Shown here one piece after another: positions 3,438 through 60,473 of a DNA stretch of 64,000 nt (the stretch's first letter is position 1; every line of letters begins with the position of its first letter). The notes under the pieces are model-generated. The model worked only from the letters and a program-made list of their open reading frames with translations. It was not told the DNA's origin and searched no databases. Origin of the DNA: Octopus sinensis (lineage: Eukaryota); contig NC_043004.1 of NCBI RefSeq assembly GCF_006345805.1, forward strand, positions 930,001 to 994,000, given 5' to 3'. Both the position numbers and the translations under genes were made by a program.

Positions 3438-7100
<3,663 letters not shown>

Positions 7101-27927: not shown

Positions 27928-27970
27928 CTATAAGAAAAACTTCTACACGAAAGAGGAAAGTTAACCTTAC

Positions 27971-40572: not shown

Positions 40573-40644
40573 TCAGGCTGTTAACCATTTTTTTCTGATG
40601 TGTTTTTCTAGATCTTGAAGTGTTGATCTTTCCTTAGGCGCAAT
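40573..40644 (-). CDS. Pseudokinase terminal coding exon, subdomain XI (IAPKERSTLQDLEKHIRKKWLTA*)
   Basis: Acceptor tttcttgtttcag|ATT. The joined sequence GWI-IAPKERSTL matches CW..dPxeRPtf. AATAAA on the minus strand at 40269-40274 and 40149-40154. Confidence 0.85.
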   Translation of the reverse strand: MAPKERSTLQDLEKHIRKKWLTA

Positions 40645-40682
40645 CTGAAACAAGAAATAGTAGTTATAATTATTATTATTAT

Positions 40683-40717
<35 letters not shown>

Positions 40718-41672
40718 TTATTATTATTATTATTATTTCAACTGTCTGCATGTTCTGAGTTCAAATTCCACTGAGGCCGACTTTGCCTTTCATCCTTTTG
40801 GGGTCGATAAATTAAGTACCAATGAAATACTGGAGTCGATGTGGTTGACCAAATTTCAGGCCTTGTGCCTTTAGTAGAAAAGATTATTATTATTGTATTT
40901 TATAAAGATTGATGTAACTCTTCAGGAAGGTAATAGGCAATAAGAAGAGCATGATGCGACTGTAATAGATTGTAAATTTAATGGTTTGAATGATATTTCG
41001 ACAGCTTGTTTGTCTTTTTCAAGTTCAAATTGTAAAATGAAAACAGCTGCAGAAACACAGAAATTCAAAATATAAATGAGAAAATCCTGTGTTCATCAAT
41101 TTGCAATTTTATAACTGGTAAAAGGAAAAAGAAAAAAAAAAACAGAAAGAAGAGAAAAGAAAAATAAAAGAATATTTAGTTGAATAGTTTTGTGTGAATG
41201 CAATGAACTTCACTTGTCATTTTATTCATTCCTTCAGGGCATGATGCCATTATTTCACAAATATATTTGTCCTCGTGCATTTTGAGGACTGAAAGTGTAG
41301 AAGTTTCAGAATATTTTTATGAGAGTGTGCACTTGCAGGTGTTCTTCAAAATTACAGCCACTCGTACATATAAAGCCATAAAGAATAGTATATAAATACT
41401 GGGTTGAAAAATCCCTTTTAGGGCACTCATTTCTCCACTATACATGACAGATGTTTCTACCATTGCACCAAAGCAGCCATTTGAATTTTTTTATCCATTT
41501 TAGAAACTTTATCCATATCAGTGAGAATTGGATGTTGTTGAAGTCATAAGAATTTATAAACTTTTGAAACAAAAATTGCTTTTTTTTTGGGGGGGGGGGG
41601 GGGATGCATCTCAAATTACATATAAAACACATAAATAACATGTAAAAAGACAAAATAGTATTGTTAACTTAC

Positions 41673-41744
41673 TATCCAACCATAATGAAGGATGCTCTTT
41701 ATCGATCTAGGAGCATAGTTACATTTCCAGCCTCTCTTTGTCAT
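41673..41744 (-). CDS. Pseudokinase exon (MTKRGWKCNYAPRSIKSILHYGWI), phase 0->0
   Basis: Acceptor ttttgctttgcattttag|ATG, donor ATA|gtaagt. 72 nt; only this frame is open. Confidence 0.85.
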
Positions 41745-41799
41745 CTAAAATGCAAAGCAAAAACCAAATTAGAGTTATAAGCAGATCACACCTAAAAGG

Positions 41800-42625
41800 G
41801 GAACAGAGTTCATTATTTACATTATTTACATTTGACGGATATTTGTCCTCATCTTGTTTGTTGTTCACACAATGTTTCGGCTGATATACCCTCCAGCCTT
41901 CATCAGGTGTCTTGGAGAAATTTCGAGCCTGGGTTCTCATTCCTAAGGTATTTTTTGCCAGCTGGAGGAGATGTTCTCCTGGGGCTACAGGCTACATTAA
42001 CACCCACCCTTAGTGGTTAGCCATATTAAGATGGCAAATATACCTCACATTGTTGTGCAGTTACTGTTTATACCTCGTTCAGAGATTTATTATTGCTTGC
42101 ATACAGTTTTTCGAGATAAGTGACGAAAAGTTACTGGAAAAATGATATAAGTATTTGCACTGGGACCCCTTTCATCGAAAACCGGTGATTGTCGTACGCT
42201 GATGACAAGTCAATACCTAGAAACTGCAGTCCGTGCGTATCACTTAGGTTGACGAGGGAAGGATGACCTCCCTTTGCAAATACCATAAGAGCACAGAAAG
42301 TGTACCTAAAGCCAGCTGGAGGAGATGTTCTCCTGAGGCTACAAGCTACAGTAACACCCACCCTTAGTGGTTAGCCATATTGAGATGGCAAATATACCTC
42401 ACATTATTATTACTATTATTATTGTTGTTATTATTATGATTATTATTATTATTATTATTATTATTATTGTTATTCAGGTCACTTCCTGGAATCGAACTTG
42501 GAATCTTGGGGTTAGTAGCCTGCGCTCTTAACCATGGCCCATGGGCATATGGTGTATTGGTTAAGAGCGCGGGCTACTAACCCCAAGATTCCGAGTTAAA
42601 TTCAAGCAGTGACCTGAACAATAAC

Positions 42626-42687
<62 letters not shown>

Positions 42688-42860
42688 TAATAATAACATC
42701 GAAAAATACCTTAGGGATGAGAACTCAGGTTTGAAATTTCCCCAAAACAGGTTGGAGGATATATCAGCCAAAACATTGTGTTAAGAACAAACAAGATGAG
42801 GGCAAATATCCGTCAAATGTAAATAATGTACATAATTCCTCATCTCTTAAATATAGAACG
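41800..42860. mobile_element. Head-to-head pair of tRNA-headed, hammerhead-bearing SINEs
   Basis: Heads at 42472-42534 (minus) and 42550-42617 (plus) with A/B-box-like motifs, each followed by (AAT)n and the same body. The left copy is interrupted at 41957-42405. Confidence 0.7.
41867..41910 (-). ncRNA. Hammerhead ribozyme motif inside a SINE, probably inactivated
   Basis: ACAC - CTGATGA - A - GGCTG gagggtatat CAGCC - GAAA - C A T T - GTGT. Stem III has a C.A mismatch where C-G is expected. Confidence 0.6.
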
Positions 42861-44532
42861 GTGGGAACAGAGTTGATAAAAATCTTTTTAAAAGGCATAA
42901 TACATTGGTGGTTCTAAAACAAAAGGGATATTATTTTGGGCACATTTAAAATGGTCAGTTGGCAGAATCGTTAGCATGCCAAGCAAAATGCTTAGCGGTA
43001 TTTCGTCTCCCGCTACATTGTGAGTTCAAATTCTGCCAACGTCAACTTTGCCTTTCATCCTTTTTGGGTCAATAAAATAAGTACCAGTTACGCACTGGAG
43101 TTGATGTAATCAAATCCAGAAGAGATGTTATATTAGGAAAAATACAACAGGAACTGGCCTATCATCAGTGTACATACATTTATGTATGTTTGATAACTAT
43201 AATCATCATCATCGTTTAATGTCCGTTTTCCATGCTGGCATGTTTTGGACGGTTTGACTAAGGGCTGGCAAGCCAGAAGCTGCACCAGGCTCCTAATAAT
43301 AATAATAATAATAATAATAGTGAAGAAGAACACATTGCATATATATCTTTGACCTTTCACTTGTTTTAGTCTTCAGACAGTGGCCATGCTGGGGCATTAC
43401 CTTGAAGGGTTTAGATGAATGAAGTGACCCCAGTACTTTTTCTCTTTTTAAATTTATGACAGGTATAGGCATGGCTGTTTGGTGAGAAGTTTGCTTCTCA
43501 ATCACATGGTTCCAGGTTCAGTCCCACTGCACAACACCTCGGGGAAGGGTATTCCACAATAACCCTGAACCAATCAAAGCCCTGTGAGTGGATTTGGTAG
43601 AAGGAAACTGAAAGAAACTCGTTTATAGGCGCAGGAGTGGCTGTGTGGTAAGTAGCTTGCTTACGAACCACATGGTTCCAGGTTCAGTCCCACTGCAAGT
43701 CACCTTGGGTAAGTGTCTTCTACTATAGCCTCAGGCCAACCAAAATCTTGTGAGTGGATTTGGTAGATGGAAACTGAAAGAAGCGCACCATCGATCATGG
43801 CCGTTTGCCAGCCTCATCTGGCACCTGTGCCAGTGGCACGTAAAAAGCACCCACTACACTCACGGAGTGGTTGGCGTTAGGAAGGGCATCCAGCCATAGA
43901 AACATTTCCAGATCGGACTGGGCCTGGTGCAGCCTTCTGGCTTCCCAGACCCTAGTTGAACCGTCCAACCCATGCTAGCATGGAAAGCGGACACTAAACG
44001 ATGATGATGATGATGATATATATATATACATATATGTATGTATGTGTGTGTATATGTTTCTGTGTCTGTGCTTGTCCCCCCAACATCGCTTGACAACCGA
44101 TGGTGGTGTGTTTATGTCCCCCTAACTTAGTGGTTCGGCAAGCGAGACTGATAGAATAAGTACTAGGCTTACAAAGAATAAGTTCTGGGGTCGATTTGCT
44201 CGACTAAAAAAGGTGGTACTCCAGCATGGCCGCAGTCAAATGACTGAAACAAGTAAAAGAGTAAAAGAGATACATACGTATCGATGTGCGTGTTTGTGTC
44301 TGTCCCATACCACTGCTTGACAACCTATGCTGGTTAGTTTATGTCCCTGTAACTTAGCAGTTCAGCAAAAGAGACTGATAGAATAAGTACCAAGGCTTAC
44401 AGGAAAACTAAAAAGTACTAGGGTCAATTCATTTGACAAAACATCATCAGAGTGGTGCCGCAGCATGGCCACAGTATAATGATTGACACAAGTAAAAGAT
44501 ACACAATAAAAAGATATCAGCTGTATATTTAC

Positions 44533-44664
44533 CTCGCTCCACACTTCCTCCCGTGGCAAGTGTATAAGGTCATCATGGACTACAACTTTCGAGAGGAGCT
44601 CCTTCAGCAAGCAGCAAATACCCCAGACATCAGCATTATTGAAATGATCATATTTAAATCGAAA
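44533..44664 (-). CDS. Pseudokinase exon, subdomains IX-X (FRFKYDHFNNADVWGICCLLKELLSKVVVHDDLIHLPREEVWSE), phase 0->0
   Basis: Acceptor ttatttttacag|TTT, donor GAG|gtaaat. 132 nt; DVWGICCLLKELL matches DVWSxGxLLxEL. Confidence 0.9.
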
Positions 44665-45289
44665 CTGTAAAAATAATAAATTGAAATAATTATAATTAAA
44701 TCGAAACTATAAAAATAATAAACGTTTCCTCATTAGTAATAATATATAATATAAAGGCGGTGAGCTGGCAGAATCGTTAGCACGCCGGGCGAAATGCTTA
44801 GCGGTATTTCATCTGCCGCTACGTTCTGAGTTCAAATTCCGCCGAGGTCGACTTTGTTTTTCATCCTTTCGGGGTCGATTAAATAAGTACCAGTTACGCA
44901 CTGGGGTCGATGAAATCGACTTAATCCGTTTGTCTGTCCTTGTTTATCCTCTCTGTGTTCATCCCCTTGTGGGTAGTAAAGAAATAGGTATCTCGTCTGC
45001 CGTTACGTTCTGAGTTCAAATCCCGCCGATGTCGACTTTACCTTTCATTCTTTCGGGGTCGATAAATTAAGTACCAGTTGCGTACTGGGGTCGATATAAT
45101 CGACTGCCCCACTCCCCCAAAATTTCGAAGTAGAAAAAAATATATAATTTTGTCTATTAAACATTGTAACGCAGCGTACGATGTAAGGGAGGTAACTCAC
45201 TATTAGTTGCCAAATAAAGTCGAACGTTGGCGGATTGACGTTCTTTCTAAAATATGTTTTCACTTTTCCGATCGATTTCTACGCAATTA

Positions 45290-45771
45290 CCGTAAATCTT
45301 CGAGTATAATCCGCATTTTTCCCCCCCAAAATTTAACGGCAAAAATCCCTAGTGCGTACTATATACGAGGTTAAAAATGAAAATTATTTTTTAAGTAACG
45401 TCCGAGTCTCTATTTGCTGTCCGGCAATGTTTATTCAGACGCATTTTGTGATGTCGGGCGCGAAAATACCTTAAATCATCCATAACTTTCAGTAAGCAAC
45501 TTTTATTAAACGTTATTACTGTTATTTCTTTATTTTCTGCAAACAAAATGCTAAAAAAAGCTACACGTTTGCCTTATGTTATATATAGAATAATAATAAA
45601 GGACGTTAGCGTATACATTTTTACAAACCAAGGACGTTCTATAGACCTCCTTGACTCAAGTTAGAGAAAGGGTGCGTATTATACACAAGGTTTAGGTTTT
45701 TCAGAGGTGCAGCCCCCTAAAAATCCCCTGTGTATTATACTCAAGGGCGGACTATACTCGAGGATTTACGG
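45290..45771. mobile_element. Tc1/mariner-superfamily (pogo-like) MITE
   Basis: TIRs ccgtaaatcttcgagtataatccgc / gcggactatactcgaggatttacgg with TA TSD. Confidence 0.8.
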
Positions 45772-46729
45772 TATGCACTTGGCTTTCCTTCAATGTCTGT
45801 GTGTGTTTGTTAGCATGTTGATAAATCGTACAGTAATAAACCAAGCAACAAATTGTCCCACACAACCATTTGACAGTGTTGGTTTGTTTACGTCCCCACA
45901 ATTTAGTGGCTAAGCGAGAAAAAAAATAGAAAGAAATCAAAACACATATACAAATGAATAAGCACTAGGATTTTAAAAAAAATAAGTACATGGGTGGATT
46001 TGTTCAATGAAACCCTTCCAGAGAGTACTCCAGCATGACCATAGTCTGATGACTGAAACAAGCAGGAGATAATAACTTAGAAAGGTTTTGGCCAGTATTG
46101 GCCCAGGTCATGTCTAACTTAATAGCACCACCTGGTGATAGAAGATTAAAAGTATGTACATGTCATTTTTTACCTGTTTTAATGATTGGACAGCAGGTAA
46201 GAGAATTGGAAATGAAATTCCAGATGTAGAAGCAGAACCTGGAATCAAAGGACCTTAAATTTGGCCCTGGCAAGGACCAAAGCTGTTGCTGTTAGCAAGA
46301 AAGCAGATAAGACTTTCTTTCCATCAGGTGAATGACATTGCTCAATATATACTCTTTACTCTTTTATTTGTTTCAGTCATTTCACTGCGGCCATGCTGGA
46401 GCACCGCCTTTAGTTGAGCAAATCAACCCCAGGACTTATTCTTTGTAAGCCTAATACTTATTCTATCGGTGTCTTTTGCCAAACCACTAGGTTACAGGGA
46501 TGTAAACACACCAGCATTGGTTATCAAGCGATGTTGGGGGGACAAACACAGACACACACACATAAATACATATATATATACATATATACATACATATATA
46601 CGATGGGCTTCTTTCAGTTTCCATCTACCAAATCCACTCACAAGGCTTTGGTCAGCCCAAGACTATAGTAGAAGACACTTGCCCAAGGTGCCACACAGTG
46701 GGACTGAACCTGGAACCATGTGTTTGAAG

Positions 46730-47230
46730 AAATTCTATTTGGTGCACCCCAGTGCAAGCTATAGACATATGGGAGGTGCAGTGGAGTCACAGGTGGGTCA
46801 ACAATGACAGTCGTTTTTGCATGTGGTAAATGTGCAGGAGCAATAGACACTGGGACAGACAGGGATTAGATTTCCTCAAATGCCCAGGTGGATCCCTAGA
46901 GATTGTGGATGGTTTCTGTTTCCTAAATGATCAAATTGGCAATGGAGAAGGGCAGTTTGAAGGTACGGTTGCTGGAATAAGAATAGGATGGATTCCAAGA
47001 ACTATTATCTTTGTTGGCGATGAGGTGGAGTGACAATGGGCTCTAACAAAGAGCAAAGGTCGGGTTGTATGGTACTTGTGTTTGAACGGCTACGCTCCAT
47101 GGTGGTGAGACATGGACTCTGAATGCAAAGAGCTTGCAAAGACTGGAGAGAAATGAGGCTAGTTACTTAGAGATCTTGTCAGTGGTTGTGCAATGCACTC
47201 TGTAAAGGACACCTAGCCAAAACTGACATT
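46730..47230 (+). mobile_element. Decayed RTE-type LINE fragment
   Basis: LEIVDGFCFLNDQIGNG....VAGIRIGW, matching the region after the RT core of RTE elements. Confidence 0.7.
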
Positions 47231-47329
47231 GGAACTAGGAGCTAACCTCTGAGATTGTCAGTTACTTTCAAACCATACCAACATGGCAAAGGGGACATTA
47301 AATGATATGTGTATATGTGTGTATACATG

Positions 47330-47380
<51 letters not shown>

Positions 47381-47854
47381 ATATATTCTGAAGAAGGTTG
47401 ACCAACTGCCAACTCTAGCCAGCAGGTATCCGCTACTGAAGATGGGAAAAGACCTAGAAACCATGTCCTACTGGTCCTGATAAAGCTAGAGGGGAGTAGT
47501 TTGCTCCCTTTCTCACAAGATACCAGACACAGGTTGTGTGTCATTAACCAGCTGGAAAAGATGTATTCTTACTACACAGCCACCCTTGTGCCTATTAATA
47601 TTTTTTTTAATATATTTATATATGTGTCTTTGTGTTTGTCTCTCACTACTGCTTCACAACCAGTGTTGGTTTGTTTACATCACCATAACTTATCGGTTTG
47701 GCAAATAGAGACTGACAGAATAAGTACTAGACTTAAAATAACTACTGGCATAGATTTGTTCAAAGTGGTGCTTCAGCATGGTCGCTGTCCAATAACTGAA
47801 ACAAGTAAAAGATAAAAGATTTTAAATATTCTCAACAAATCAAAGAATACTTAC

Positions 47855-47985
47855 TTCTGGGGGCAAAATTGTTGGGAATACTAGATTCTGTGTTGTTTCT
47901 ATGTTCAGGTGTGAAGTGAGAGAAGCTCCCAGGTGAAAGTTCGTTAACTGTGGAATTCCTTTCTCATTCAATAATAAATTATTAG
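47855..47985 (-). CDS. Pseudokinase exon, subdomains VIb-VIII (S-NNLLLNEKGIPQLTNFHLGASLTSHLNIETTQNLVFPTILPPE), phase 1->0
   Basis: Acceptor ggtttttcag|CT, donor GAA|gtaagt. 131 nt; NLLL..G.PQLTNFH matches NILL..G.xKLxDFG, and PPE matches APE. Confidence 0.9.
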
Positions 47986-48418
47986 CTGAAAAACCACAAA
48001 GTTAAACAGATCAGTTTCAGAATGACTGTAATGATAAGAATCCCAAATAGTATCTCTGCAACTATATATATCCTTTCTACTAAAGGCACAAGGCCTGGAA
48101 TTTTGGGGCAGGGGACTAGTTGATAATATCGACCCCAGTGTTTCACTGGTACTTAATTTATTGACCCCAAAAGGATGAAACTATATATATATGTAAAGGT
48201 AACACGCATTAACAAAGGGATGTAGGTTCAACTCCCAAGCAGATATGAAAGCCTTCTTTTTTCTGTCGAGGGCTTATATGTCCTTTTATTAGACTATTTT
48301 CCTTAGTCATTGCACGGTGAATGCTATAAGCTAATATAAAAATATCATTATTATTATTTACAGGATTGTAAAAACAGCACTGTATAAAAATCCATTATCA
48401 CCGAAAGCATATATATAT

Positions 48419-48892
48419 ACTAGCAGCATAGCCCGGCGTTGCCCGGGTATGTAAGAGCCCCTAGTAGGCAACGACTAATCCCAATCTAGTCCTTTCCCTC
48501 TAATTTCCTGCCAATTTGTGAAAACGCGATTTTCCAAAATGGCATGATTTTATCGATTTTTTCTGATGGTAAGGTATTGCATGGAAAACTAACATCAGAA
48601 TTAAGTTTCTTAGGGTAACATTAAGCTTCACCATGAGTTTGGTGAAAATCGATTGCAAGTTGCGAAAACTACAACAGAAAATGTGTTGCATATAAAAAGC
48701 TTAGATTCTTGACCCCGTGTCGAATTTATCGATTTTTTCAGAACTGGGGGAACTTTTCAAAATTTTCGCTGCGTTAGTTTTGAATTATGACATTGGGCTA
48801 TGTGTGTGTCAAGTTTCATCAGAATCGGTTGAAAGCTGTAGTCAGGGTGAGGGTACAACCTGACAGACACACAGACAGACAAACTGCCGTTT
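48419..48892 (+). mobile_element. Non-autonomous Helitron-like (Lep1/HINE-type) element
   Basis: 5' actagcagcatagcccggcgttgcccggg and 3' gacagacacacagacagac followed by a (TA)n run. Confidence 0.6.
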
Positions 48893-48918
48893 ATATATAT
48901 ATATATATATATATATAA

Positions 48919-48961
<43 letters not shown>

Positions 48962-49005
48962 TATATATAAATATATATATATATATTATATATATATATA
49001 TATAA

Positions 49006-49049
<44 letters not shown>

Positions 49050-49364: not shown

Positions 49365-49484
49365 ATGTCCAAGCTAGAAATAAGATTCCATTTTCATTGA
49401 GGTATTTGGCAGCTTCGATTAATTTTAAGATTATGTCTTTTATTTCAGCAGCGTATAAAGCATTAAGTTTTCTGTGTAATGGTT
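49365..49484 (-). CDS. Pseudokinase exon, subdomains VIa-VIb (E-PLHRKLNALYAAEIKDIILKLIEAAKYLNENGILFLAWT), phase 1->1
   Basis: Acceptor ttttattcctgttgcag|AA, donor ACAT|gtaagt. 120 nt; KYLNENGI-LFLA aligns with YLHxxGI-vHRD. Confidence 0.9.
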
Positions 49485-52400
49485 CTGCAACAGGAATAAA
49501 ACATAAATATATACAAATAAACAACGATCTTCATATTTATATGTAACACACACACAGGCTGAAGATCTTAATTAAGTTAACAAGCTATCAAGCAACTGTC
49601 ACCATCATCCTATCATATTTATTTAGCATGTTGCCATGTTCTGCTACTCTATATTTCGTTTTTCGCCCTTTTCAAGCCTAGCCAGGCTCATGGACCCGGT
49701 TTCTGTGGCGTATGTGTTCCCCCCAGCTGGACGGGACGCCAGTCCATCACAGCATTACTCAAGAAACAGGAAGAAAGAGTGAGAGAAAGTTGTGGCGAAA
49801 GAGTATAACAGGGGTCGCCACCACCCCCTACAGGAGCTTCTTGGAGCTTTTAGGTGTTTTCGCTCAATAAACACACGCAACGCCCGGTCTGGGAATCAAA
49901 ACCACGATCAACCGACTGCGAGTCCGCTGCCCTAACCACTGGGCCAATATGCCTCCAAATGCCCATTCTCAAGCCATGCCAGGCTCATAAGGGCCGGTTT
50001 CTGGTTTCAGTGGCGTAGAAATTCCCCACCTGGACGGGACGCCAGTCCGTTGCAGGATTATTCATTTTTGCCAGCTGAGTGGACTGGAGCAGCGTGAAAA
50101 GAAGGGTTTTGCTCAAGAACACGACACATAGCCCGGTCCAGGAATCAAAACCACAACCTTATGATCATGAATTCAACACCCTAACTACTAAGCCACACGC
50201 CTCCACTATGTGCCCTTTTAAAGCTTAACCAGGCTCATGGGCCCGGTTTCCCAGTTTCCATGGCATATGTGTTCCCCAGCTGGACAGGACACCAGTCCAT
50301 CGCAGTGTTACTCATTTTTGCCAGCTGAGTGGATGGGAGCAACGTGAAATGAAGTGTTTTGCTCAAGAACACAATGCGTCACCCGGTCCGGGAATGGAAA
50401 CCACAATCTTACCATCACAATGCTGACACCCTAACCACTAAGTCACATGCCTCTACTGCTACTCTGTATTGCAAGTTCATAATCCACTAGAGTTGACTTC
50501 ACTCTTTTATTTGCACAGATGCCATCCTATCACACACATCTCCAGGAAGAGACAGTGTCCAAGAAAATAAGAATCTATCATAAACTGGTTCAATTCTACA
50601 AACGAATACCTTCATCATCATCATTTAACGTCCATTTCCCATGCTAGCATGGGTTTTTTACAAATTTGTGACCTTATGACCTAAATGTTAAACAATAAAA
50701 TAAGTAATTGTATGTATGTATGCATACATACATACATACATACAAACATGCACGCACACATACATACATATAAATGCCAGGTGCAGTTTCACTGCTCAGC
50801 ACTGCACAAGTATCTCCAATAGTCACAGACCGACCAATGCCTTGTGATTAGATGGACTAAAAATGCCAACTGTGTCATCATCATCAACAACATCATCATT
50901 TAACGTCCATTTTCCATGCTGGCATGGGTTGGACAGTTCAACAAGTGCTGATAGGCTGGAGAACTACACCAGGCTTCGTTTGTGTGTTTTGGCAGGGTTT
51001 CTATGGCTCGATGCCCTTCCTGATGCCAACCACTTTACAGAGTGCTTTTATGTGGCACCAGTGGAGTTACCAAGTAGCTTGCAAGACAAAGTCATCTCAG
51101 CTGAGAGAGTGGGGTGGGGTAGTGTGGAACTGAGGAAAATGTCTGTGATCCAGGTGAGAGGCTGGAATAGAAAGTGGGGCAGAAATAATTGTCTTGCTAT
51201 AGAGGGAATACTTTGCTAGCCCAGAGGAATGGGAGAGAGTTCAGGAAAAATAAAGAGACAGCCAGGATAGGAGAGAGAAAAATAGATGGTGTTGGAGATG
51301 TATTGGGGCCAGGAGGATGTTCCATAAGAGTGTGAGAAACTGTTAAGGAACATCTCTAGGTACACATATGGGTTTGTTGAGGGTTATGCTGCTCCTAAGT
51401 CCAAACAATATATGAAACAAATATAAAGTTATTCTAAAATATCATTCTGCATGTGGTGCTCCAGCTGAGCCAGTCTTTTGGGCCAAAATGCATAAAAGAA
51501 TAAAAGATTAATATTTCTACCAATTTATTACACATTTCTACAGCCTCCATCATTCAGAATTTCTCTTCTTTTCTTATCTTTTTTCCCCCCATTCTTTCTC
51601 CTCTTTCCTAGGATTTTCTTTGTGTATTTGACAAAGGATTATGTCCAAAGCATTAAACATGAAACTCTATGATTTTAACTTTGTAACATTTTTCCTCCTT
51701 TGAGTACCAACCTAATAAAATTAACAACGAAGACCCGATAAATGAAGTGAATTCATGGCTCACAGGACGGCCTGCTGTGCTTATCTTGGATCGTAGGGTG
51801 ACCCGGTGTGCTTGAGGAGACCTATTGAGTCAAGTACATCAACATCAAAATAAATATCAAATGGAAATTGTAGTTGTGATACCCGTGTCGGTGGCATGTA
51901 AAAAGCACCGTCTGAACGTTGTTGATGCCAGCGCTGCCTTCGCTGGCGTCCATGCCGGTGGCACATAAAAAGCACCAACCGATTGTGAACATTGCCAGCC
52001 TCCTCTGGCCCCTCTGCCAGTGGCACGTAAAAAGCACCCACTACATTCATGGAGTGGTTGGCGTTAGGAAGGGCATCCAGCTGTAGAAACACTGCCAGAT
52101 CAGACTGGAGCTTGGTGCAGCCTCCTAGCTTCCCAGACCCCAGTCAAACCGTCCAACCCATGCTAGCATGGAAAACAGACGTTAAACGATGATGATGATG
52201 AATGAATATACCCTACATTGTTGTTGTTTGTGATTACTGTTATGGATTCTGAATAAGGTTTTTTGACAAAAACACCAGTTGCCCAAGCACACAATCTCCC
52301 CCTCTCTCTGATGTTTATCTAAAATAAAAAACACCGCTGCCTTAAGCTGATAGACTTTAGCATCAGGGTCATTTCAGGAACTGCCGTCAGAATACAAAGA

Positions 52401-52589
52401 ACCAGAAGAGATGCTGCAAGGCACCTTCCCCTATTCTGTAATAGTTCCATTAATCCACTGGCCAGGTTTGGGACTTTTCATATTGTTCCTAAAACGGTGA
52501 AAGACACATATGACTTTAACCATTTAAACATGGGAAACAGGTTTATCCACTCAAAATTCTATGACTTCAACAGCTTTGCAAAGACTTTC

Positions 52590-53657
52590 TCTGAGCTGTG
52601 TGAAACTCCACCTCTCTAACACCCGTGGACATGTTTACAAAGTCAGAAAACAGCACAGCTCCCATGATTTTCGGAAACATTTTTTCACGCTAAGGAACAA
52701 ACTGCCGGTATCAGTTGTTAGCTGTCAAAGCACTGCATCCTTCAAAACTTCCATACTTCCTGAGATTCGCCAACACTACACCCCTTCATACACACGCAGG
52801 TATGAACCTGACTCATACACTGTTCACTTCCCAGACATTTGTACATTACTGCATATGCTTCATATGCACTTTTGACAAGTTGTGGTGCACCTGAGCACTG
52901 TATACAATAATTTTATTATTATTATTATTATAACCCTGCGTCCACATACTCCCTCCACAACACTGATATCAAGAAATCCTCTTGCGAGCGTGACCTAGGC
53001 ATCACTGTCAGCAGTGATTTGCGTTGGACAAAGCATATCTCTAAAATTGTCAAGAAGGCCGAGGGTGTCTTGGCATCACTCAGCAAGACTTTTGTTAGCC
53101 GCTCTCCAGCCATCTATTTAAAACTGTATACAGCTATGGTACGACCACACTTGGAATTCACATCATCAGTTTGGAATCCCTATCTTGCTCAGAACATTGA
53201 CCTCCTGGAATCTGTCCAGAGACGTGCAACCAAACGCATACCCTCCATCAGACACCTACCATATTCTGAGCGCCTTGTTTCCCTGGGCATGGATTCACTG
53301 AAGCTCCGGCATCTAGCGACGGACTTGGTAAACACCCACAAGGTTATCAACCACCTCACCAACAACAACACTGAACACCTTTTTGATCTCCATGTGTCTA
53401 ACACACGTGGACATGCCTACAAAGTCAGAAAACAGCACAGCTCCCATGACTTTCGGAAACATTTTTTCACGCTCAGGGTTGCTGAAGCGTGGAATAAACT
53501 GCCTGCATCAGTTGTTGACTGCCATGACACTGCATCCTTTAAGGCCCTCATGCTTCCCGAAATCCGTCGAAACTACACCTGATTATATATACACTTTAGA
53601 TGAGTTGTAGTGCACCTGAGCACTGTACACAATTATTATTATTATTATTATTATTAT
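52590..53657 (+). mobile_element. Two tandem 3' fragments of a CR1-clade LINE
   Basis: KLYTAMVRPHLEF.SSVWNPY..LESVQRRATK..YSERL..NTRGH..FF..RV..WNKLP. Each copy ends gtgcacctgagcactgta plus (ATT)n, at about 52931 and 53657. Confidence 0.9.
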
Positions 53658-54190
53658 AAACAGAGGCACTCTTAGACACCTTTTTGCAAAAGACAATTTT
53701 CCAGATTTTTCTTCACTTGCTTCACATATTTCATCAAATATTTCTTTAAAGTGCAAGAATCAAATACTTTTAGTAGTGGGCACGGGTGTTGCTGTGCGGA
53801 AAGAAACCTGCTTTGCAACCACACGGTTTCTGCGACTTTTGAAAATATATAAGTAAAGGGGAGGTAACATAGTTTGTCGTTTCAAATCTTCTAACACTGC
53901 CATACATGTTTCTCTCCCCTGACATATTTTTACTCTGCAGTTACTATTTATCTTTTATTCTATTACTTGTTTCAGTCATGAAACTGCGGCCATGCTGGGG
54001 CACCGACTTTTTGAGTAGAACTAATCGACCCCAGTGCTTTTCTTTTTAAGCCTGGTCGAACCGCTACGTTAAGGAGACGTAAAAGCACCAAGCGGTGTTG
54101 GGAGGACAGCACGTGGAAAATGCAAAACATAGTTGACACGTTGCTAAGATGAGAAGAAAAAATATGGATAAGATGATGTGTGATACATAC

Positions 54191-54341
54191 CACAATAGAA
54201 CTTGGAACAAAAATAAAGTTCGTTTCTGTTTAGGATAATCCAGTTAATTGGGATAATGTACTGATATTGGAGGGAACCAATCTTCTTTAGAACAGTGAAA
54301 CATTCGCTCAAATAATTCTGCTGATGCTGAACATTCTGGCA
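54191..54341 (-). CDS. Pseudokinase exon, subdomains III-V (CQNVQHQQNYLSECFTVLKKIGSLQYQYIIPINWIILNRNELYFCSKFYC), phase 0->1
   Basis: Acceptor tttgttattccag|TGC, donor TGTG|gtatgt. 151 nt; resembles the E..VLKKL..HxNI...LY...EY pattern. Confidence 0.85.
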
Positions 54342-54363
54342 CTGGAATAACAAATGACAACGG

Positions 54364-54407
<44 letters not shown>

Positions 54408-54514
54408 GCAATTTAAACAATGATAGACATAAACCAAATCATAAATAAAAAATAAAATTTTTTTTTTTTCAAAACATAGCTAGATCACAAAAAGTATAAA
54501 AATGAATAATCAAT

Positions 54515-54688
54515 ATAGGCGCAGGAGTGGCTGTGTGGTAAGTAGCTTGCTAACCAACCACATGGTTCCGGGTTCAGTCCCACTGCGTGGCATCTTGGGC
54601 AAGTGTCTTCTGCTCTAGCCTCGGGCCGACCAAAGCCTTGTGAGTGGATTTGGTAGACGGAAACTGAAAGAAGCCCGTTGTATATATG

Positions 54689-54723
<35 letters not shown>

Positions 54724-54920
54724 CTGCGTTTGTCCCTCTAGCATTGCTTGACAACCGATGCTGGTGTGTTTACGTCCCCGTCACTTAACGGTTTGGCAAA
54801 AGAGGCCGATAGAATAAGTACTGGGCTTACAAAGAATAAGTCCTGGGGTCGATTTTACTTGACTAAAAGGCGGTGCTCCAGCATGGCCGCAGTCAAATGA
54901 CTGAAACAAGTAAAAGAGTA
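54515..54920 (+). mobile_element. Representative copy of the dominant tRNA-derived SINE with an internal (TA/TG)n tract
   Basis: Head ggcgcaggagtggctgtgtggtaagtagc..ggttccgggttcagtccc; tail gcatggccgcagtcaaatgactgaaacaagtaaaagag. Other copies at about 13300, 14290, 35885, 43450-44230, 46360 (minus), 59690 (minus) and 60800. Confidence 0.85.
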
Positions 54921-55219
54921 TATAATAAGTTATTATATATTATTATATATATTATCATATATAATAATAAACTTATTATATATTGATTATTCATTTTTGT
55001 ACTTTTTGTGATCAAGCTATGTTTTGAAAAAAAATATATTTTATTTTTTATTTATGATTTGGTTTATGTCTATCATTGTTTGAATTGCATAATAGTGGTT
55101 TTTCTCTAATTTATATATATTATATAGTTATATTGTGAAATTTGATTTAATACTAAATTGCATTTTTCCCTGTAAGTTTGGAGTTATACTCCTATTATTA
55201 TTATTATAATTATTATTAT

Positions 55220-55254
<35 letters not shown>

Positions 55255-55718
55255 AGGGAGATAGAGAGATAAAGAGATTTTACAAAATTTCACTTACTGT
55301 TCTCTCTTTTACTCTTCCCCTTTCTCTCTCTCTCTCTCTGGTCATATTTATTTGGTTTGAAGGTGTGGTATTGTTAGGATTTCCTTTGGTAAAATGCTTT
55401 GTCTGCCATTTTATGTGACATGAGAGGTAGTTGGTTATTTGCATAAAGAGGGATAAGGCACAAATATTCGGAGCTTCAACATCGATTGTAGTATTTATTA
55501 GGGCACTGATGAGATGAACGTATAACTGCATAATGTTTCTATCCTGATTATGTAATCATTTCAGCGTTTTACTGAAACACGTATGTGTCCAACAAAGCTT
55601 TGGATGCTACATCTGTTTTCTGCTTATTATTTATATATATATATAAATATATGTGTGTGAGTGTGTGTGTGTATGTGTGTAAAATCTTTACAGTAGTAAC
55701 TAGAAGGAATAGACTTAC

Positions 55719-55850
55719 TTTAGTTACTATGACATATTCTTTGTTCAGATGCATCAGGTTACTCACTCCACAGATTGGCAACTCTTTTAACTTCACTTTT
55801 GTACAATTCTTAACATCGTTTGCTGACTTAAATTCACAAGTGTTCGAAAA
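55719..55850 (-). CDS. Pseudokinase exon, degenerate subdomains I-II (FSNTCEFKSANDVKNCTKVKLKELPICGVSNLMHLNKEYVIVTK), phase 0->0
   Basis: Acceptor cttgtttcag|TTT, donor AAA|gtaagt. 132 nt; VIVTK sits at the VAIK position. Confidence 0.85.
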
Positions 55851-56214
55851 CTGAAACAAGCAAGGTAATAAATAATGATAATAATAATAATAATAATAAT
55901 AATGATGGTGATGGTGATGATGGTGATGATGGTGATGATGATGATGGTGATGGTGATGGTGTTGGTGATGATGATGATGAGGATGATCTTCTTCTTCTTC
56001 TTTTTTTTGCCCCAGTATACCTACTGGAGGAGTTAATTCGATCCTATAAAATATTATCAAAAATGAAGTAGATTGACACTAGATGCTGAAATATCGTTCA
56101 GTTCATAACAATGGCACTCTTCTTTTTTTTTTGCTTCTATATACCTTCTGGAGGAGTTACCTTAATCCTATAAAATATTAATAATAATAATAATAATAAT
56201 AATATAATAATAAT

Positions 56215-56765
56215 AAATGCCCTGATGCAGAACCAGGCAGTGGCTCTCGTGCCTTCTGGTCTCAACTGATTGGAAGTGTTATCATGTACATTGTTTTGTC
56301 TTGGTATAAAAGATGGGCTACAACAAATATTCTACTCAATACCACAGATTTGCTTGTCAGTTGTTAGACCTTAACCAGTTGAGCATGTCCCTTAGGGGCT
56401 GACAATATGTGCATCTCTGATCACAAGCAGAAGTAGTGGGGGAGCATCATAGCCATGTGTTGAGAGGAATTCTTTGGGGTTTGAATAATTTACCTCTGGA
56501 AACATGGGTGGTTCATTCAACAGCCTCAAACAACCCTTATTCAGAGACCTTTTGAGAGGGATGGGTTACTTGACCAGATGAAAATTCTAACTAGGCCCCA
56601 TCTGCAAAGTCATGTGGTATTTATCTTGATATCAGATCACCATGTTGCGCACATATGGTTGTGATGCATGTGCCTGGTGTACCCTTATCAGATGGGTAAT
56701 CATGATGGGTATATTAAGCTTTGTAAATTTTACCCCACCATCACTTTGATGGCATGCACTGCGCT
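56215..56765. repeat. Interspersed repeat inserted in an (AAT)n tract
   Basis: About 550 bp flanked by (AAT)n on the left and an AAC/AAT-rich run on the right. It may be a non-coding derivative of a TAA-targeting element (inference). Confidence 0.4.
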
Positions 56766-59146
56766 AACAACAATAACAATAATTCTTTCTGTTATAGGCA
56801 CAAGGTCTGAAATTTAGTGGGAAGGGCCAGTCAATTACATTGATACCAATGTTCAACAGGTACTTCTTTTATGGACCTCAGAGGGATGAATAGAAAAGTC
56901 CACAACAGAAGAATCTGAACTCAGAACATAAAGACGGGTGAAATACTGCAAAGCATTTTTGTAAGTATGTTAACAATTCTGTCAGCTCACCACCTTAACG
57001 ATGATGACGTCGACAATTATGATGATAATAATAATGAGTTCATTGTGAGTGCCACTGGAGTGGCGCTCTAGTGCAGGTAGCATGTAAAAAGCACCATTTG
57101 AACGTGGCTGTTGCCAGTACCACCTGACTGGCCCTCGTGCTGGTGGCACGTAAAAGCACCCACTACACTCTCAATGCTTGAATGGTGCTTTTTATGTGCC
57201 ACTGGCACAGGTGCCAGTCAAACAGCACTGGCATCGATAGACTAGAATTACACTCAGTTCAACAGTTCTTCACAAGCACAGCATATCGCCCAACACTTGA
57301 AGGATGCTCTTAACAAGTCAATTACGCAACACTGACATTGGCCATGACAACGATCTAACTCTGCTTGACATCGTTTGAAGTAAACAGAACTATTATTGTT
57401 TGTCTCCTGAATAATTTTGAGATTCTGTCCATTAGTTTACCTGCAATCATTACTCTTGAGCTGTATATGTAACTATTTAATTTTTTTCAGGAGCACAGGT
57501 GGAGGGCAAAGTTATATTTAGGGGCCTAGGTCTGAGAGGGTTACCAATCTTAGAAAGATGATAGGTAAGGTTAACCTTTGTAGGGTTTCAACCAAAAGGT
57601 CACAGATTTGAAGACTGGCTATAGTAATACCAGTAATTGACTGGTACTAATTTATGGACTCCAGAATGATGGGAGGCAAAATTGGCTTCCATGGAATATA
57701 ATGGTATTTTACCTATTACAACTGTTTCTGTCATTTTTAGGAACTCAAACAATAACGATTTGTTTAAATACCACCAGCAGCACCACCACTATCATCATCA
57801 TCAAACATCCATTTTCCATGCTGGCATGGGTTGGACAGTTTGAGAAAAGCTGGCAAACTGGAGAGCTGCACCAGGTTCCGTTGTCTGTTTTGGAATGGTT
57901 TTTATGGTTGGATGCCATTCTTAATACCAACCACTTTACCGAGGGTACTGGGTATTTTATATGTGACACCAGCAAGGGTGCTTTTTATGTGGTACCAGCA
58001 AGGGTACTTTTTATGTGATACCTGCAAAGGTACTTTTTATGTGGTACCAGTAAAGGTACTTTTTATGTGGTACCAGCACTTCAAACAATTATCTTTTTCA
58101 ATGGTTTGGTACGTAGAAATTTCAAGTTGATTCAAAATATCCTGTTTCAAAATTCTAACTAGGACGCAGTCATTGAAATTGTCAATTTCCAAATCTGAAA
58201 ATTGGGTGCCACTTTAGCATGTGATCTTCCTGACTATTTACATTTTAACATGCAGCCTAACCCAAACCTTAAGCCTAATCCCCAACTGTGACACAGATCA
58301 GGTCATGTCACTGCACATAGAATATGGATACTGATGTAGACCACATGCTAAAGTAGCACCAAAGCAGATGAGAATCTCTTGAAGTATTTATTTCAATAGA
58401 TTTTTGTTCATAAAAATGAATCATTTTGAAGAAATACCCCAAATATTCTATTCAACTTCTAAATTGCCAGTGTGTGGTCGTTTTATCAGAACCAAGCAAT
58501 AGCAATAGCAAATACCATATAATGACCTTCAAACGTTGGGCCTCACAGAGGCAATAACGAAAGACTGAGACCTCTGAAGATATACTGTGACTGTGAAGAC
58601 CCGGCAAATAAAGTGAGGTCACAACTGTATCCTACACCAGTTTCGCATAACCATCCCCAGCCCACTCAAAAGTACCTTGGATCGTAGGGTGATATGCTGT
58701 GCTTGGGGAGGCCTATTGAGTCAAGTACATCAACAACAAAATGAAAATCAAATGAAAATTGTAGTTATGATCTCCATGTCAGTGGCACATAAAAAGCACC
58801 ATCCGAACGTGGCCGATGCCAGCGCCACCTTGACTGGCCCCTGTGCCGGTGGCACGTAAAAAGCACCCACTACACTCTCAGAGTGGTTGGTGTTAGGAAG
58901 GGCATCCAGCTTTAGAAATCTGGCCAGATCAGATTGGAGCCTGGTGCAGACTCCTGGCTTCCCAGACCCCAGTTGAACCGTCCAACCCATGCCAGCATAG
59001 AAAACGGATGTTAAACGACAATGATGATGATGAGTTACCATTTACTAAACTTCCCAGCATGCAACTTGTCTATTTTAAAATGGAATTCATAGACTGTTGT
59101 CCCAAACCCATCTAAAGTAATAAAAAAACTAAATTTTCTTCTTTAC

Positions 59147-59234
59147 CTTAAAGAACTGAGTTGTGTTATCACATTGCACAAATTCTTCAGCTGAATAGAT
59201 GCATTCCATTAACTCTTCTTGACTTTGCTTCAAT
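59147..59234 (-). CDS. Pseudokinase exon (R-LKQSQEELMECIYSAEEFVQCDNTTQFFK), phase 2->0
   Basis: Acceptor ttttgttctttactcag|A, donor TAAG|gtaaag. 88 nt; phases match both neighbours. Confidence 0.8.
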
Positions 59235-59362
59235 CTGAGTAAAGAACAAAAACATGCAAATTGTAGATGTCTTTCATTTTATATTATTAAATAATTATTA
59301 ATTATGGGGGAAGTATTAATGCCAAAAGATGTTAGTACTGTTTGCCAATAATTATTCTTTAA

Positions 59363-59584
59363 CCCTTTCGTTACTGTATTTATTTTGAGATGCTCTGTGT
59401 TTCTTTCAATTAATTTTAAATATAACAAAGAATTTAGTAAAATAACTTAGTTATGATTAAGCTAGTTTTAGGAGCATAAATTGTGATTAAGGTTTGGTGG
59501 AAGATTTCAATTCAGAACTTATGAAAACAAGACATTTGTACTACAGAGCCAGAGCCGGTTTCAGCCGGGTTGGTAATGAAAGGG
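59363..59584. mobile_element. piggyBac-like MITE
   Basis: TTAA TSDs at 59359-62 and 59585-88; TIRs ccctttcgttac / gtaatgaaaggg. Confidence 0.75.
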
Positions 59585-60321
59585 TTAATAAGCCTGATGG
59601 CTATTTGCAACATTAGTGACCGGAAAAAACACTGAAATTTTGTATATACACTATTAAAGAACAAAATTATTATACTAAGAGCCACACTTTTATTTGTTTT
59701 AGTCATTTGACTGCGGCCATGCTGGAGCATCACCTTCAGTCGAACAAATCAACCCCAGGACTCATTCTCTGTAAGCCTAGAAGTTATTTCATCTGGCTCT
59801 TTTGCCGAACCATTAAGTTACGGGGATGTAAACACACCAGCATTGGTCATCAAGCGATGGTGGTGGTGGTGGTGGGGAGGGGGACAAACACAAACACAAA
59901 CATATATATATATATATATATATACACACATCCCCATAACACATAGATTATATGTTTAGCAACCAACTGATTCAAGTCAACAACAGTCTTAACAATATGC
60001 TGGGCAAAATACCTTTCATCTCTCATCTCTCACTCTTTCTCTCTTTCACTCACTCATGCACTCACTTTCCTTCTATCCAATTCTTGCAATGTGCATCTGT
60101 CAATGATTGTTATTTTTGTCTGCTCCCCACCATTCCTCCCAGAGGTCAACAAGAATTCAGTGTTATATACAAACACTTCCCCACCTTCCTTTCTCTCCCT
60201 CCCTATCTCCCTTCCCCTCCCTATCTCTCTCCCTCCCTATCTCTCTCCCCTTCCCTCTCAAAGGCTGCCGTGACACAAGATAGGAACCTTTGTTCTCTAG
60301 ATAATAACAGAAATGACGTAC

Positions 60322-60473
60322 CTCCTTGAGAACTGTGTACAACCAACAGCTTTGCAAGCGATCTCTTTACACTTCAGGCAGTGTTCCAACAGGACACAAA
60401 GGGTGTGGCTGTCATCAAGACCAAGATGTCGGTTCTGGATATTCTCCTGTAAAGTTTTCACATATTTTTTGCC
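60322..60473 (-). CDS. Pseudokinase gene, most 5' exon found (GKKYVKTLQENIQNRHLGLDDSHTLCVLLEHCLKCKEIACKAVGCTQFSR), phase 0->2
   Basis: Acceptor ttcttcaatttacag|GGC, donor GGAG|gtacgt. 152 nt open frame whose phase matches the next exon. Confidence 0.8.

What the first reader, a model, noticed from the sequence alone, without database searches (positions are those of the whole stretch)
40573..60473. Nine-exon pseudokinase with a helical N-terminal region, possibly an MLKL-like (4HB/HeLo plus pseudokinase) architecture in a mollusc
Seen: nine minus-strand exons with canonical splice sites and fully consistent phases join into about 350 aa, which the ORF track shows only in pieces. The C-terminal ~270 aa follow kinase subdomains I-XI, but the Gly-rich loop is gone, HRD is FLA and DFG is NFH, while a beta-3 Lys (VIVTK), PPE, DVW and the subdomain XI Arg remain. 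Established: loss of both the HRD and DFG aspartates defines a catalytically dead pseudokinase, and MLKL combines an N-terminal four-helix bundle with such a domain. Inference: the upstream segment (LCVLLEHCLKCKEIACKAVGCTQFSRRLKQSQEELMECIYSAEEF) looks amphipathic and helical, which raises the possibility of a bundle-plus-pseudokinase effector. It could equally be a lineage-specific or germline pseudokinase.
Basis: partly seen in the sequence, partly recalled or inferred. Interest (0 to 1): 0.78.

Follow-up and report, generated by a model that had tools for sequence, protein, structure and literature searches.

The report
TAZ-like zinc module plus dead kinase
The nine exons are the 3' three-quarters of a real, conserved octopus gene for a catalytically dead kinase, and its helical front part resembles a CBP/p300-type TAZ zinc finger rather than the MLKL cell-death bundle, which points to an undescribed but not revolutionary scaffold-protein family.

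Summary
Nine minus-strand GT-AG exons (window 40573-60473) splice into 1050 nt. These give residues 149-497 of Octopus sinensis LOC115215143 (497 aa), letter for letter. The full gene has 12 coding exons; three lie 5' of the window.

Exon structure and lengths are conserved in O. bimaculoides and Argonauta hians. dN/dS is 0.18, so the gene is under purifying selection.

The kinase domain passes Pfam Pkinase but lacks the Gly-rich loop. HRDLKxxN is FLAWTSNN, DFG is NFH and APE is PPE.

The MLKL idea is not supported:
- The "amphipathic helical" segment is the second half of a Cys/His module (C-x4-C-x4-C ... H-x3-C-x4-C-x4-C, residues 129-198).
- That module aligns over its whole length with the octopus CBP/p300 TAZ2 zinc finger (hhalign probability 93-97%, far above shuffled controls).
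- The nearest kinases by sequence and by fold are ordinary Ser/Thr kinases (CDK, PAK, ASK1, RSK), not MLKL.

The same TAZ-like-plus-dead-kinase module ends 760-1130 aa uncharacterised proteins in gastropods, bivalves, a brachiopod and sea stars. None of 24 representatives keeps the HRD aspartate.

Best reading: a non-catalytic scaffold of an undescribed bilaterian family, shortened at the N-terminus in cephalopods.

The parts
60322..60473 (-). Coding exon 4 of 12 (aa 149-199): second and third helices and the H-x3-C-x4-C-x4-C zinc-type site of the TAZ-like module
   Evidence: Exact spliced model. hhalign to TAZ2. H179, C183, C188 and C193 are present in 22-23 of 24 family members.
59147..59234 (-). 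Coding exon 5 (aa 199-228): linker helix. The donor is after ...FFK (GTAAAG), not after ...AEEF.
   Evidence: tblastn at 100% identity.
55719..55850 (-). Coding exon 6 (aa 229-272): start of the N-lobe, degenerate Gly-loop region (ICGVSN) and beta-3 VIVTK
54191..54341 (-). Coding exon 7 (aa 273-322): alpha-C, beta-4/5 and hinge
   Evidence: AF2 helix 280-294 and strands 304-320.
49365..49484 (-). Coding exon 8 (aa 323-362): alpha-D/E and the catalytic loop, with FLAWT in place of HRDLK
47855..47985 (-). Coding exon 9 (aa 363-406): the retained catalytic-loop Asn (N365), NFH in place of DFG, the activation segment and PPE
44533..44664 (-). Coding exon 10 (aa 407-450): subdomain IX DVWG, alpha-F and the family-invariant H441
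41673..41744 (-). Coding exon 11 (aa 451-474): alpha-G/H region
40573..40644 (-). Coding exon 12 (aa 475-497 plus TGA): subdomain XI with invariant R480

Best explanation
The window holds exons 4-12 of a single-copy, selectively maintained octopus gene (O. sinensis LOC115215143, 12 coding exons over about 54 kb).

The product has three parts:
- a poorly ordered N-terminus of about 120 aa;
- a TAZ2-like Cys/His helical module (aa ~129-198), which keeps the first (CCC, His lost) and third (HCCC) zinc sites of the CBP/p300 TAZ2 pattern and has lost the middle one;
- a short linker and then a protein-kinase fold that cannot catalyse by the canonical mechanism (no Gly-rich loop, no HRD Asp, DFG Asp replaced by Asn).

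It is the fast-evolving, N-terminally shortened cephalopod orthologue of an uncharacterised family. That family also occurs in gastropods, bivalves, a brachiopod and sea stars, where the same module follows a 400-750 aa Ser-rich disordered region carrying conserved short motifs.

Shown: the gene structure, conservation, purifying selection, motif losses, TAZ2-like homology and family distribution.

Inferred: it works as a non-catalytic scaffold or adaptor. The zinc-stabilised TAZ-like helices would bind a disordered peptide partner, as TAZ domains do. The dead kinase domain would serve as a rigid docking or allosteric platform. AF2 gives a single confident body (pTM 0.71, aa 120-200 pLDDT 81-94).
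For: Gene model:
- The spliced window DNA translates exactly to P0001.
- O. bimaculoides and Argonauta have the same 12 exons, with identical lengths for 10 of them.
- A 2.6-kb intronless transcript-type contig from a relative carries an uninterrupted 514-codon ORF.

Selection: dN/dS is 0.18 (bootstrap 0.11-0.27) against O. bimaculoides, and 0.09-0.14 against Argonauta.

Kinase fold:
- Pfam Pkinase, 44 bits.
- Foldseek E about 1e-10 to CDK2, PAK4, ASK1 and others.

Dead catalytic site, in 24 family representatives:
- The HRD Asp position is N12/A5/Y5/L2, never D.
- The DFG Asp position is N in 22.
- Structural residues E406, D418, W420, G421 and R480 are invariant.

TAZ-like module:
- hhalign probability 97%, E 8e-11. 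The real score is 53.2, against 10.0 +/- 2.2 (maximum 17.9) for shuffles and 12.9 for the reversed sequence.
- The tool's hhalign of the full family against octopus TAZ2 gives probability 93%, E 3e-7, covering aa 129-198.
- zf-TAZ is the only non-kinase Pfam family hit by several members (5 of 24, best E 0.048).
- C136, C141, C146, H179, C183, C188 and C193 are present in 22-23 of 24 members.
- AF2 helices begin and end at these ligands, as in TAZ.

Family:
- Distribution.
- The tree follows taxonomy, with one copy per species.
- All matches in the O. sinensis genome are at this one locus.
Against: - No member reaches Pfam's zf-TAZ gathering score, and the PF02135 scan of the genome did not hit this locus.
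- Site 1 lacks the TAZ histidine and site 2 is absent, so zinc binding and a true TAZ fold are unproven.
- I could not read model coordinates, or crop the model, to test zinc geometry or to run Foldseek on the module alone.
- There is no octopus RNA-seq evidence here, and nothing on tissue, partners or localisation.
- The scaffold function is inference from domain types.
- Some kinases with degenerate motifs are nevertheless active. A Lys near beta-3, N365 and N378 are conserved, so nucleotide binding is not excluded.
Confidence: 0.6

Rival explanations
1. MLKL-like cell-death effector: an N-terminal membrane-permeabilising four-helix bundle held in check by a pseudokinase.
For: The region upstream of the kinase is helical, with about four helices between aa 120 and 196. 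The kinase is catalytically dead.
Against: - The helices carry a conserved CCC...HCCC ligand pattern and align with TAZ2, not with a 4HB.
- Exon 1 (aa 1-106) has no PDB or Pfam match and is mostly low-confidence in AF2.
- MLKL is not among the best 50 fold hits or the best 60 profile hits.
- A 34-phylum survey reported MLKL absent from Mollusca.
- Sea stars, which are reported to have MLKL, also have this separate family.
Confidence: 0.03
2. An atypical but active kinase that uses non-canonical residues, so that calling it a pseudokinase is a misnomer.
For: The catalytic-loop Asn (N365, 22 of 24) and an Asn at the DFG position (22 of 24) could still hold a metal. A Lys is present at or next to beta-3 in most members. 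Several bivalve, brachiopod and sea-star members keep a GxxGxV remnant of the Gly loop.
Against: - The catalytic-base position is variable (N/A/Y/L) and never acidic.
- The alpha-C Glu position is not conserved (aligned Gln or a gap in most members).
- The Gly loop is lost in gastropods and cephalopods.
Confidence: 0.12
3. The Cys/His module is a different zinc-binding or disulfide-rich fold that only shares cysteine spacing with TAZ2 by convergence. In that case the protein is simply a pseudokinase with an unclassified Cys-rich N-terminal extension.
For: - Pfam zf-TAZ hits are sub-threshold.
- The genome scan with PF02135 missed the locus.
- Only two of three TAZ sites are present, and one lacks His.
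- There is a weak alternative hit, zf-C2H2_13, E 0.022, in the O. bimaculoides isoform.
Against: - The alignment covers the whole TAZ2 domain with both ligand clusters in register.
- It includes non-ligand matches, such as the basic residues after the third Cys and the C-x-VP-x-C motif.
- It scores about 20 SD above composition-matched shuffles.
- The predicted helices flank the ligands as in TAZ.
Confidence: 0.2

Closest known systems
CBP/p300 TAZ2 (CH3) zinc finger, Pfam PF02135
   Same: The cysteine spacing matches at two sites: C-x4-C-x4-C followed by a basic helix, and H-x3-C-x4-C-x4-C with a C-x-VP-x-C motif. The helix-ligand-helix layout is the same. hhalign probability is 93-97% over the whole domain.
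   Different: The middle HCCC site is missing and the first site has no His. The module is below Pfam's threshold. It is fused directly to a kinase fold rather than sitting in an acetyltransferase or BTB protein. Peptide-binding function is untested.
MLKL (four-helix bundle + brace + pseudokinase)
   Same: A helical N-terminal region followed by a catalytically dead kinase domain, with loss of DFG/HRD function.
   Different: The N-terminal helices are a Cys/His TAZ-like module, not a 4HB. The kinase domain is not closest to MLKL/TKL kinases. MLKL is reported absent from molluscs.
Canonical Ser/Thr protein kinases (CDK7/CDK2, PAK4, ASK1/MAP3K5, RSK2, PLK, NEK1): best sequence and fold matches
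   Same: Bilobal ePK fold. It retains the beta-3 Lys region, the catalytic-loop Asn, the APE Glu to subdomain XI Arg pair, and DxWxxG.
   Different: No Gly-rich loop, no HRD Asp and no DFG Asp. W replaces L and T/S replaces K in HRDLK. No single kinase group stands out. The 'NEK protein kinase' label on the O. vulgaris orthologue has no specific support here.
Uncharacterised 760-1130 aa proteins, e.g. Haliotis LOC124138244, Aplysia LOC101845767, Lingula LOC106181796, Acanthaster LOC110983315
   Same: The same C-terminal TAZ-like module plus dead kinase, with YLNWTxxN / NF(S/T) motifs. One copy per species, and the tree follows taxonomy.
   Different: They carry a long Ser-rich disordered N-terminal region with conserved short motifs (RRSVSF, SSGYGTG, LPDLV/SPDVV, DDNVF). 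The octopod protein lacks this region. The cephalopod branch is very long (1.3 substitutions per site).

Membership tests
Eukaryotic protein kinase fold (Pfam PF00069 Pkinase) | Score above Pfam's gathering threshold across subdomains I-XI | tested here: met
   44.0 bits against a cut-off of 31.7, aa 257-489. Foldseek E about 2e-10 to CDK2 and PAK4.
Pseudokinase (catalytically dead ePK) | Loss of the HRD catalytic Asp, the DFG metal-binding Asp and/or the Gly-rich loop | tested here: met
   FLAWTSNN aligns to HRDLKPNN and NFH aligns to DFG. Across the family the HRD Asp position is never D, and the DFG Asp position is N in 22 of 24. Lack of enzymatic activity itself is not testable here.
MLKL | N-terminal four-helix bundle (4HB/HeLo-like) plus two-helix brace | tested here: not met
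   The helical region aa 129-198 aligns with the TAZ2 zinc finger. aa 1-106 has no PDB or Pfam match and low pLDDT. A direct structural superposition on the MLKL NTD could not be run.
MLKL | Pseudokinase domain most similar to MLKL/TKL-group kinases | tested here: not met
   Best sequence, profile and fold matches are CDK7, CDK2, PAK4, ASK1, RSK2, PLK and MAP3K2. There is no MLKL in the listed top 50-60.
MLKL | Taxonomic distribution compatible with MLKL | tested here: not met
   The literature reports no MLKL in Mollusca (PMC11476962). This family co-exists with MLKL-bearing echinoderms as a separate lineage.
zf-TAZ (PF02135) | Score above Pfam's gathering threshold (25 bits) | tested here: not met
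   Best member E 0.048, and 5 of 24 members hit below threshold. The six-frame genome scan with PF02135 finds the CBP/p300-like loci but not this gene.
zf-TAZ (PF02135) | Three HCCC zinc sites linking four helices | tested here: not met
   Site 3 is intact (H179-x3-C183-x4-C188-x4-C193). Site 1 has C136, C141 and C146, but the His position is R/K. Site 2's ligands are absent. Hence 'TAZ-like', not a canonical member.
zf-TAZ (PF02135) | Detectable homology by profile-profile comparison | tested here: met
   hhalign probability 97%, E 8e-11 against octopus TAZ2. The maximum score among shuffles was 17.9, against 53.2 for the real sequence. Probability was 93%, E 3e-7, with full-length profiles.
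zf-TAZ (PF02135) | Zinc binding and binding of disordered transactivation peptides | not testable with these tools
   Needs metal analysis and binding assays.
NEK kinases (label on the O. vulgaris orthologue) | Specific clustering with NEK catalytic domains and an active HRD/DFG | tested here: not met
   NEK1 is only one of many equally scoring hits (E about 7e-22, against 1e-24 for RSK2). The catalytic residues are absent.

The most novel reading that the evidence does not exclude
A previously undescribed, single-copy bilaterian protein family (Spiralia plus Echinodermata; not found here in vertebrates or ecdysozoans). In it, a degenerate CBP/p300-type TAZ2 zinc module is fused to, and packs as one unit with, a catalytically dead kinase domain. 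This would be a new domain architecture that couples a transcription-factor/IDR-binding module to a pseudokinase scaffold. Cephalopods have shed the long motif-bearing disordered N-terminus.
Probability: 0.5. Interest if true: 0.55.

Novelty: new variant of a known kind. Interest (0 to 1): 0.45.

Why it matters
Pseudokinases are now recognised as signalling scaffolds and allosteric switches, yet few conserved families remain unclassified.

This one pairs a dead kinase with a TAZ-like zinc module. I found no description of that architecture in the searched literature. Its members are all annotated 'uncharacterized' or mislabelled (NEK, ndrC, serine-rich adhesin).

It gives a concrete, testable candidate for a new peptide-binding/pseudokinase scaffold in molluscs, brachiopods and echinoderms.

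It also removes a tempting but wrong claim that molluscs have an MLKL-like necroptosis effector.

Tried and rejected
1. Pfam on single exons or ORF pieces gave nothing. The exons are too short and divergent.

I then read stops as residues, only to satisfy the length filter, and scored just the 44-aa exon-9 region. This is how the annotated protein was found, and no read-through sequence was used as evidence.

3. AF2 with two sequences failed (pLDDT 31). It was usable only with the 24-member alignment.

4. I first suspected POMK, FAM69/DIPK or STK31 (Tudor plus kinase) from memory. I rejected them because the relatives show no Tudor or other Pfam domain and have a different motif pattern.

5. 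phmmer of exon 4 alone against the PDB gave only chance hits.

6. A full-model Foldseek search is dominated by kinases, so it says nothing about the N-terminal module.

7. The third homologue search, from the sea-star member, found only another sea star and no named deuterostome relative.

8. The ORF at 56392-56565 (-), which I considered as a possible exon, is not part of the gene.

9. The His/Tyr-rich 169-aa ORF around exon 6 is intronic microsatellite read-through, and its ZrgA/DUF755 hits are compositional.


Full report
**What is in the window.** The region is eukaryotic, AT-rich, repeat-laden DNA. The window is contig C8:930001-994000 of a 2.72-Gb, 13,516-contig assembly.

Single exons gave no Pfam hit. 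A search scored on the 44-aa exon carrying NFH...PPE found two proteins. One is O. sinensis 'uncharacterized protein LOC115215143' (P0001, 497 aa, 98% identity; the single mismatch is the split junction codon). The other is its Argonauta hians orthologue (P0002, 495 aa).

tblastn of P0001 on the window and an exact splice-aware reconstruction give the following:
- Nine minus-strand exons at 60322-60473, 59147-59234, 55719-55850, 54191-54341, 49365-49484, 47855-47985, 44533-44664, 41673-41744 and 40573-40644.
- All are AG...GT bounded with consistent phases.
- They concatenate to 1050 nt and translate letter for letter to residues 149-497 plus the stop.

**The gene is larger than the finding.** Residues 1-148 come from three further exons 5' of the window. 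These are C8:998794-998889, a 29-nt micro-exon at C8:1002939-1002967, and exon 1 at C8:1024290-1024608. The gene thus has 12 coding exons over about 54 kb. All genome matches to P0001 lie at this one locus, so it appears to be single-copy.

**Is it a functional gene?** I fetched the O. bimaculoides and Argonauta loci and reconstructed them the same way.
- Both have the same 12 exons with GT-AG borders.
- Ten of the 12 exon lengths are identical across all three genera. Exons 1 and 11 differ by multiples of three.
- Nei-Gojobori dN/dS is 0.18 (bootstrap 0.11-0.27, dS 0.22) between O. sinensis and O. bimaculoides.
- dN/dS is about 0.09-0.14 against Argonauta, where dS is saturated.
- A 2.6-kb contig from a sequencing run of a related animal carries an uninterrupted 514-codon orthologous ORF, meaning a spliced transcript.

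This is purifying selection on a real gene. Octopus RNA-seq itself could not be examined.

**The kinase domain.**
- Pfam Pkinase scores 44 bits over aa 257-489.
- The best PDB sequence match, CDK7, aligns HRDLKPNN with FLAWTSNN, DFG with NFH and APE with PPE.
- With a 24-sequence alignment, AF2 gives pLDDT 74.7 and pTM 0.71, with a standard bilobal fold.
- Foldseek's best PDB hits are CDK2, PAK4/1, CDK5, MST3 and ASK1.
- A family profile hits RSK2, MAP3K2, PLK2/4, SLK, ASK1, MELK, NIK and NEK1 at similar E-values.
- No kinase group stands out, and MLKL is not among the listed hits.

**The family.** An exhaustive phmmer search found about 25 cluster representatives that match from residue ~125 to the C-terminus. 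They come from gastropods (Gigantopelta, Aplysia, Babylonia, Haliotis, Lymnaea, Littorina), bivalves (Mercenaria, Argopecten, Saccostrea), the brachiopod Lingula and the sea stars Acanthaster and Patiria. O. vulgaris and O. bimaculoides orthologues are also present.

These proteins are 760-1130 aa long. They are annotated 'uncharacterized' or carry evidently automatic names. Pfam sees only the kinase domain in them.

Column statistics over 24 members:
- The HRD Asp position is N/A/Y/L and never D. The following Leu is an invariant Trp. The Lys of HRDLK is mostly Thr/Ser.
- The DFG Asp is Asn in 22.
- Structural residues (APE Glu, DxWxxG, subdomain XI Arg) and a family-specific His441 are invariant.
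- Gastropods and cephalopods have no Gly-rich loop. Some bivalve, brachiopod and sea-star members keep a GxxGxV remnant.

The whole family is therefore predicted to be catalytically inactive by the canonical mechanism. A maximum-likelihood tree follows taxonomy with one copy per species. It places the cephalopods as a strongly supported clade on a very long branch.

**The N-terminal 'helical' segment.** Its pattern is C136-x4-C141-x4-C146, then a basic helix, a variable loop, a helix ending in H179, and then x3-C183-x4-C188-x4-C193, usually as C-x-VPW-C. These seven residues are present in 22-23 of 24 members.

The spacing is that of zinc sites 1 and 3 of the CBP/p300 TAZ2 domain. To test this I did the following:
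- I located the octopus's own TAZ domains with PF02135.
- I compared the family's module profile with the octopus TAZ2 sequence using hhalign. The result was probability 97%, E 8e-11, score 53.2. The reversed sequence scored 12.9. One hundred composition-preserving shuffles scored 10.0 +/- 2.2, with a maximum of 17.9.
- The built-in profile comparison of the full-length family alignment with two octopus TAZ2 sequences gave probability 93%, E 3e-7, over aa 129-198.

zf-TAZ is also the only non-kinase Pfam family that several members touch (5 of 24, best E 0.048, below threshold). AF2 predicts confident helices (pLDDT 81-94) at 120-135, 144-161, 167-182 and 193-196. These start or end at the ligand residues, as in TAZ.

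There are caveats:
- The middle TAZ site is absent.
- Site 1 lacks its histidine (R/K instead).
- No member passes Pfam's threshold.
- The PF02135 genome scan did not pick up this locus.
- I could not inspect coordinates or search with the isolated module.

I therefore call it TAZ-like (probably TAZ-derived), not a canonical TAZ domain.

**The MLKL hypothesis.**
- Residues 1-106 have no PDB or Pfam similarity and are mostly low-confidence.
- The structured helical part is the Cys/His module just described.
- The kinase domain is not MLKL-like.
- A 34-phylum survey found MLKL in no protostome except bdelloid rotifers, and explicitly not in Mollusca (PMC11476962).

**Most likely mechanism.** Shown: a conserved, selected protein that combines a TAZ-like Cys/His helical module with a catalytically dead kinase fold. 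Inferred: it acts as a scaffold.
- TAZ domains are known to bind disordered amphipathic peptides. This is established knowledge of CBP/p300, and I did not test it here.
- Pseudokinases commonly act as docking or allosteric modules.
- The high pTM suggests the two parts form one body.
- In non-cephalopod members the long Ser-rich N-terminal region carries conserved short motifs (K/R-R-S-V-S-F, S-S-G-Y-G-T-G, LPDLV/SPDVV, DDNVF). These look like phospho-regulated or docking motifs. The octopod protein has lost them.
- Whether these motifs bind the TAZ-like module in cis is speculation.

Rivals are an atypical active kinase (about 0.12), convergent Cys spacing with no TAZ ancestry (about 0.2) and an MLKL-like effector (about 0.03).

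**Novelty.** The gene is already annotated as an uncharacterised locus. Full-text searches found no description of a TAZ-type module fused to a pseudokinase. I rate it a new variant of a known kind (a new pseudokinase family and architecture). It is of moderate interest, and the more exciting MLKL reading is removed.

Noticed in passing
outside the window: G000 C8:1002939-1002967 (-); L017:11332-11360; L018:2218-2246: A 29-nt micro-exon encoding (D/N)FIQL(G/S)... is conserved in O. sinensis, O. bimaculoides and Argonauta. tblastn missed it, and it was found only by a motif search.
   Followed up: yes
gene span: C8:970573-1024608, compared with L017:4771-24753 and L018:1001-24339: The same 12-exon gene spans about 54 kb in O. 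sinensis, but about 20 kb in O. bimaculoides and about 23 kb in Argonauta. The introns, especially intron 1 (about 21 kb), are greatly expanded by repeats in O. sinensis.
   Followed up: partly
window 52911-53582 (+) and 52528-52875 (+), inside the intron between exons 7 and 8: A 223-aa open frame resembles the C-terminal part of a non-LTR retrotransposon ORF2, and a partial second copy sits just upstream sharing the motif ...NTRGH.YKVRKQHSSHDFRKHFFTLR.... There is no Pfam hit. It is presumably a decayed host transposon on the opposite strand.
   Followed up: partly
window 313-1539 (-), 20038-20844 (-), 3717-4187 (-), 33552-34013 (-): Transposable-element fragments. There is a reverse transcriptase (RVT_1, E 2e-20) and an endonuclease/exonuclease/phosphatase domain (E 6e-7). 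The last frame resembles a mariner/transposase-like N-terminus by eye only, with no Pfam hit.
   Followed up: partly
window 27921-28601 (-): A 226-aa stop-free frame rich in hydrophobic stretches, looking like a multi-pass membrane protein. It has no Pfam match. It could be an exon of a neighbouring gene or a chance frame.
   Followed up: no
window ~11990-12100: A run of N (translated as X in two ORFs). This is an assembly gap.
   Followed up: no
window 55851-56078 (-), just upstream of exon 6: The long His/Tyr-rich 'ORF' that contains exon 6 is intronic (CAT)n/(TAT)n-type microsatellite read in frame. Its weak ZrgA/DUF755/Zip Pfam hits are compositional.
   Followed up: yes
family members P0004-P0042 (alignment A2, columns ~250-1070): The long N-terminal disordered regions of the non-cephalopod homologues share short conserved motifs: K/R-R-S-V-S-F, S-S-G-Y-G-T/S-G, LPDLV/SPDVV (repeated) and D-D-x-V-F. 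From memory, the SSGYGS form resembles a phosphodegron-type motif. This was not tested.
   Followed up: partly
P0001 residues W361, H441, C424, C317 and W306 (window exons 8, 10 and 7): These family-invariant or near-invariant residues are not standard kinase signature residues. Examples are Trp in place of the Leu of HRDL, and an invariant 'RH' after alpha-F. Their role is unexplained. Possibilities are the interface with the TAZ-like module or the fourth ligand of the CCC site.
   Followed up: no
P0108/P0109 (O. bimaculoides 542 aa, O. vulgaris 547 aa isoforms); L017:1001-1153: Longer annotated isoforms add about 45-50 N-terminal residues from an upstream alternative first exon. The O. vulgaris orthologue is labelled 'NEK protein kinase', which the data here do not support.
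   Followed up: partly
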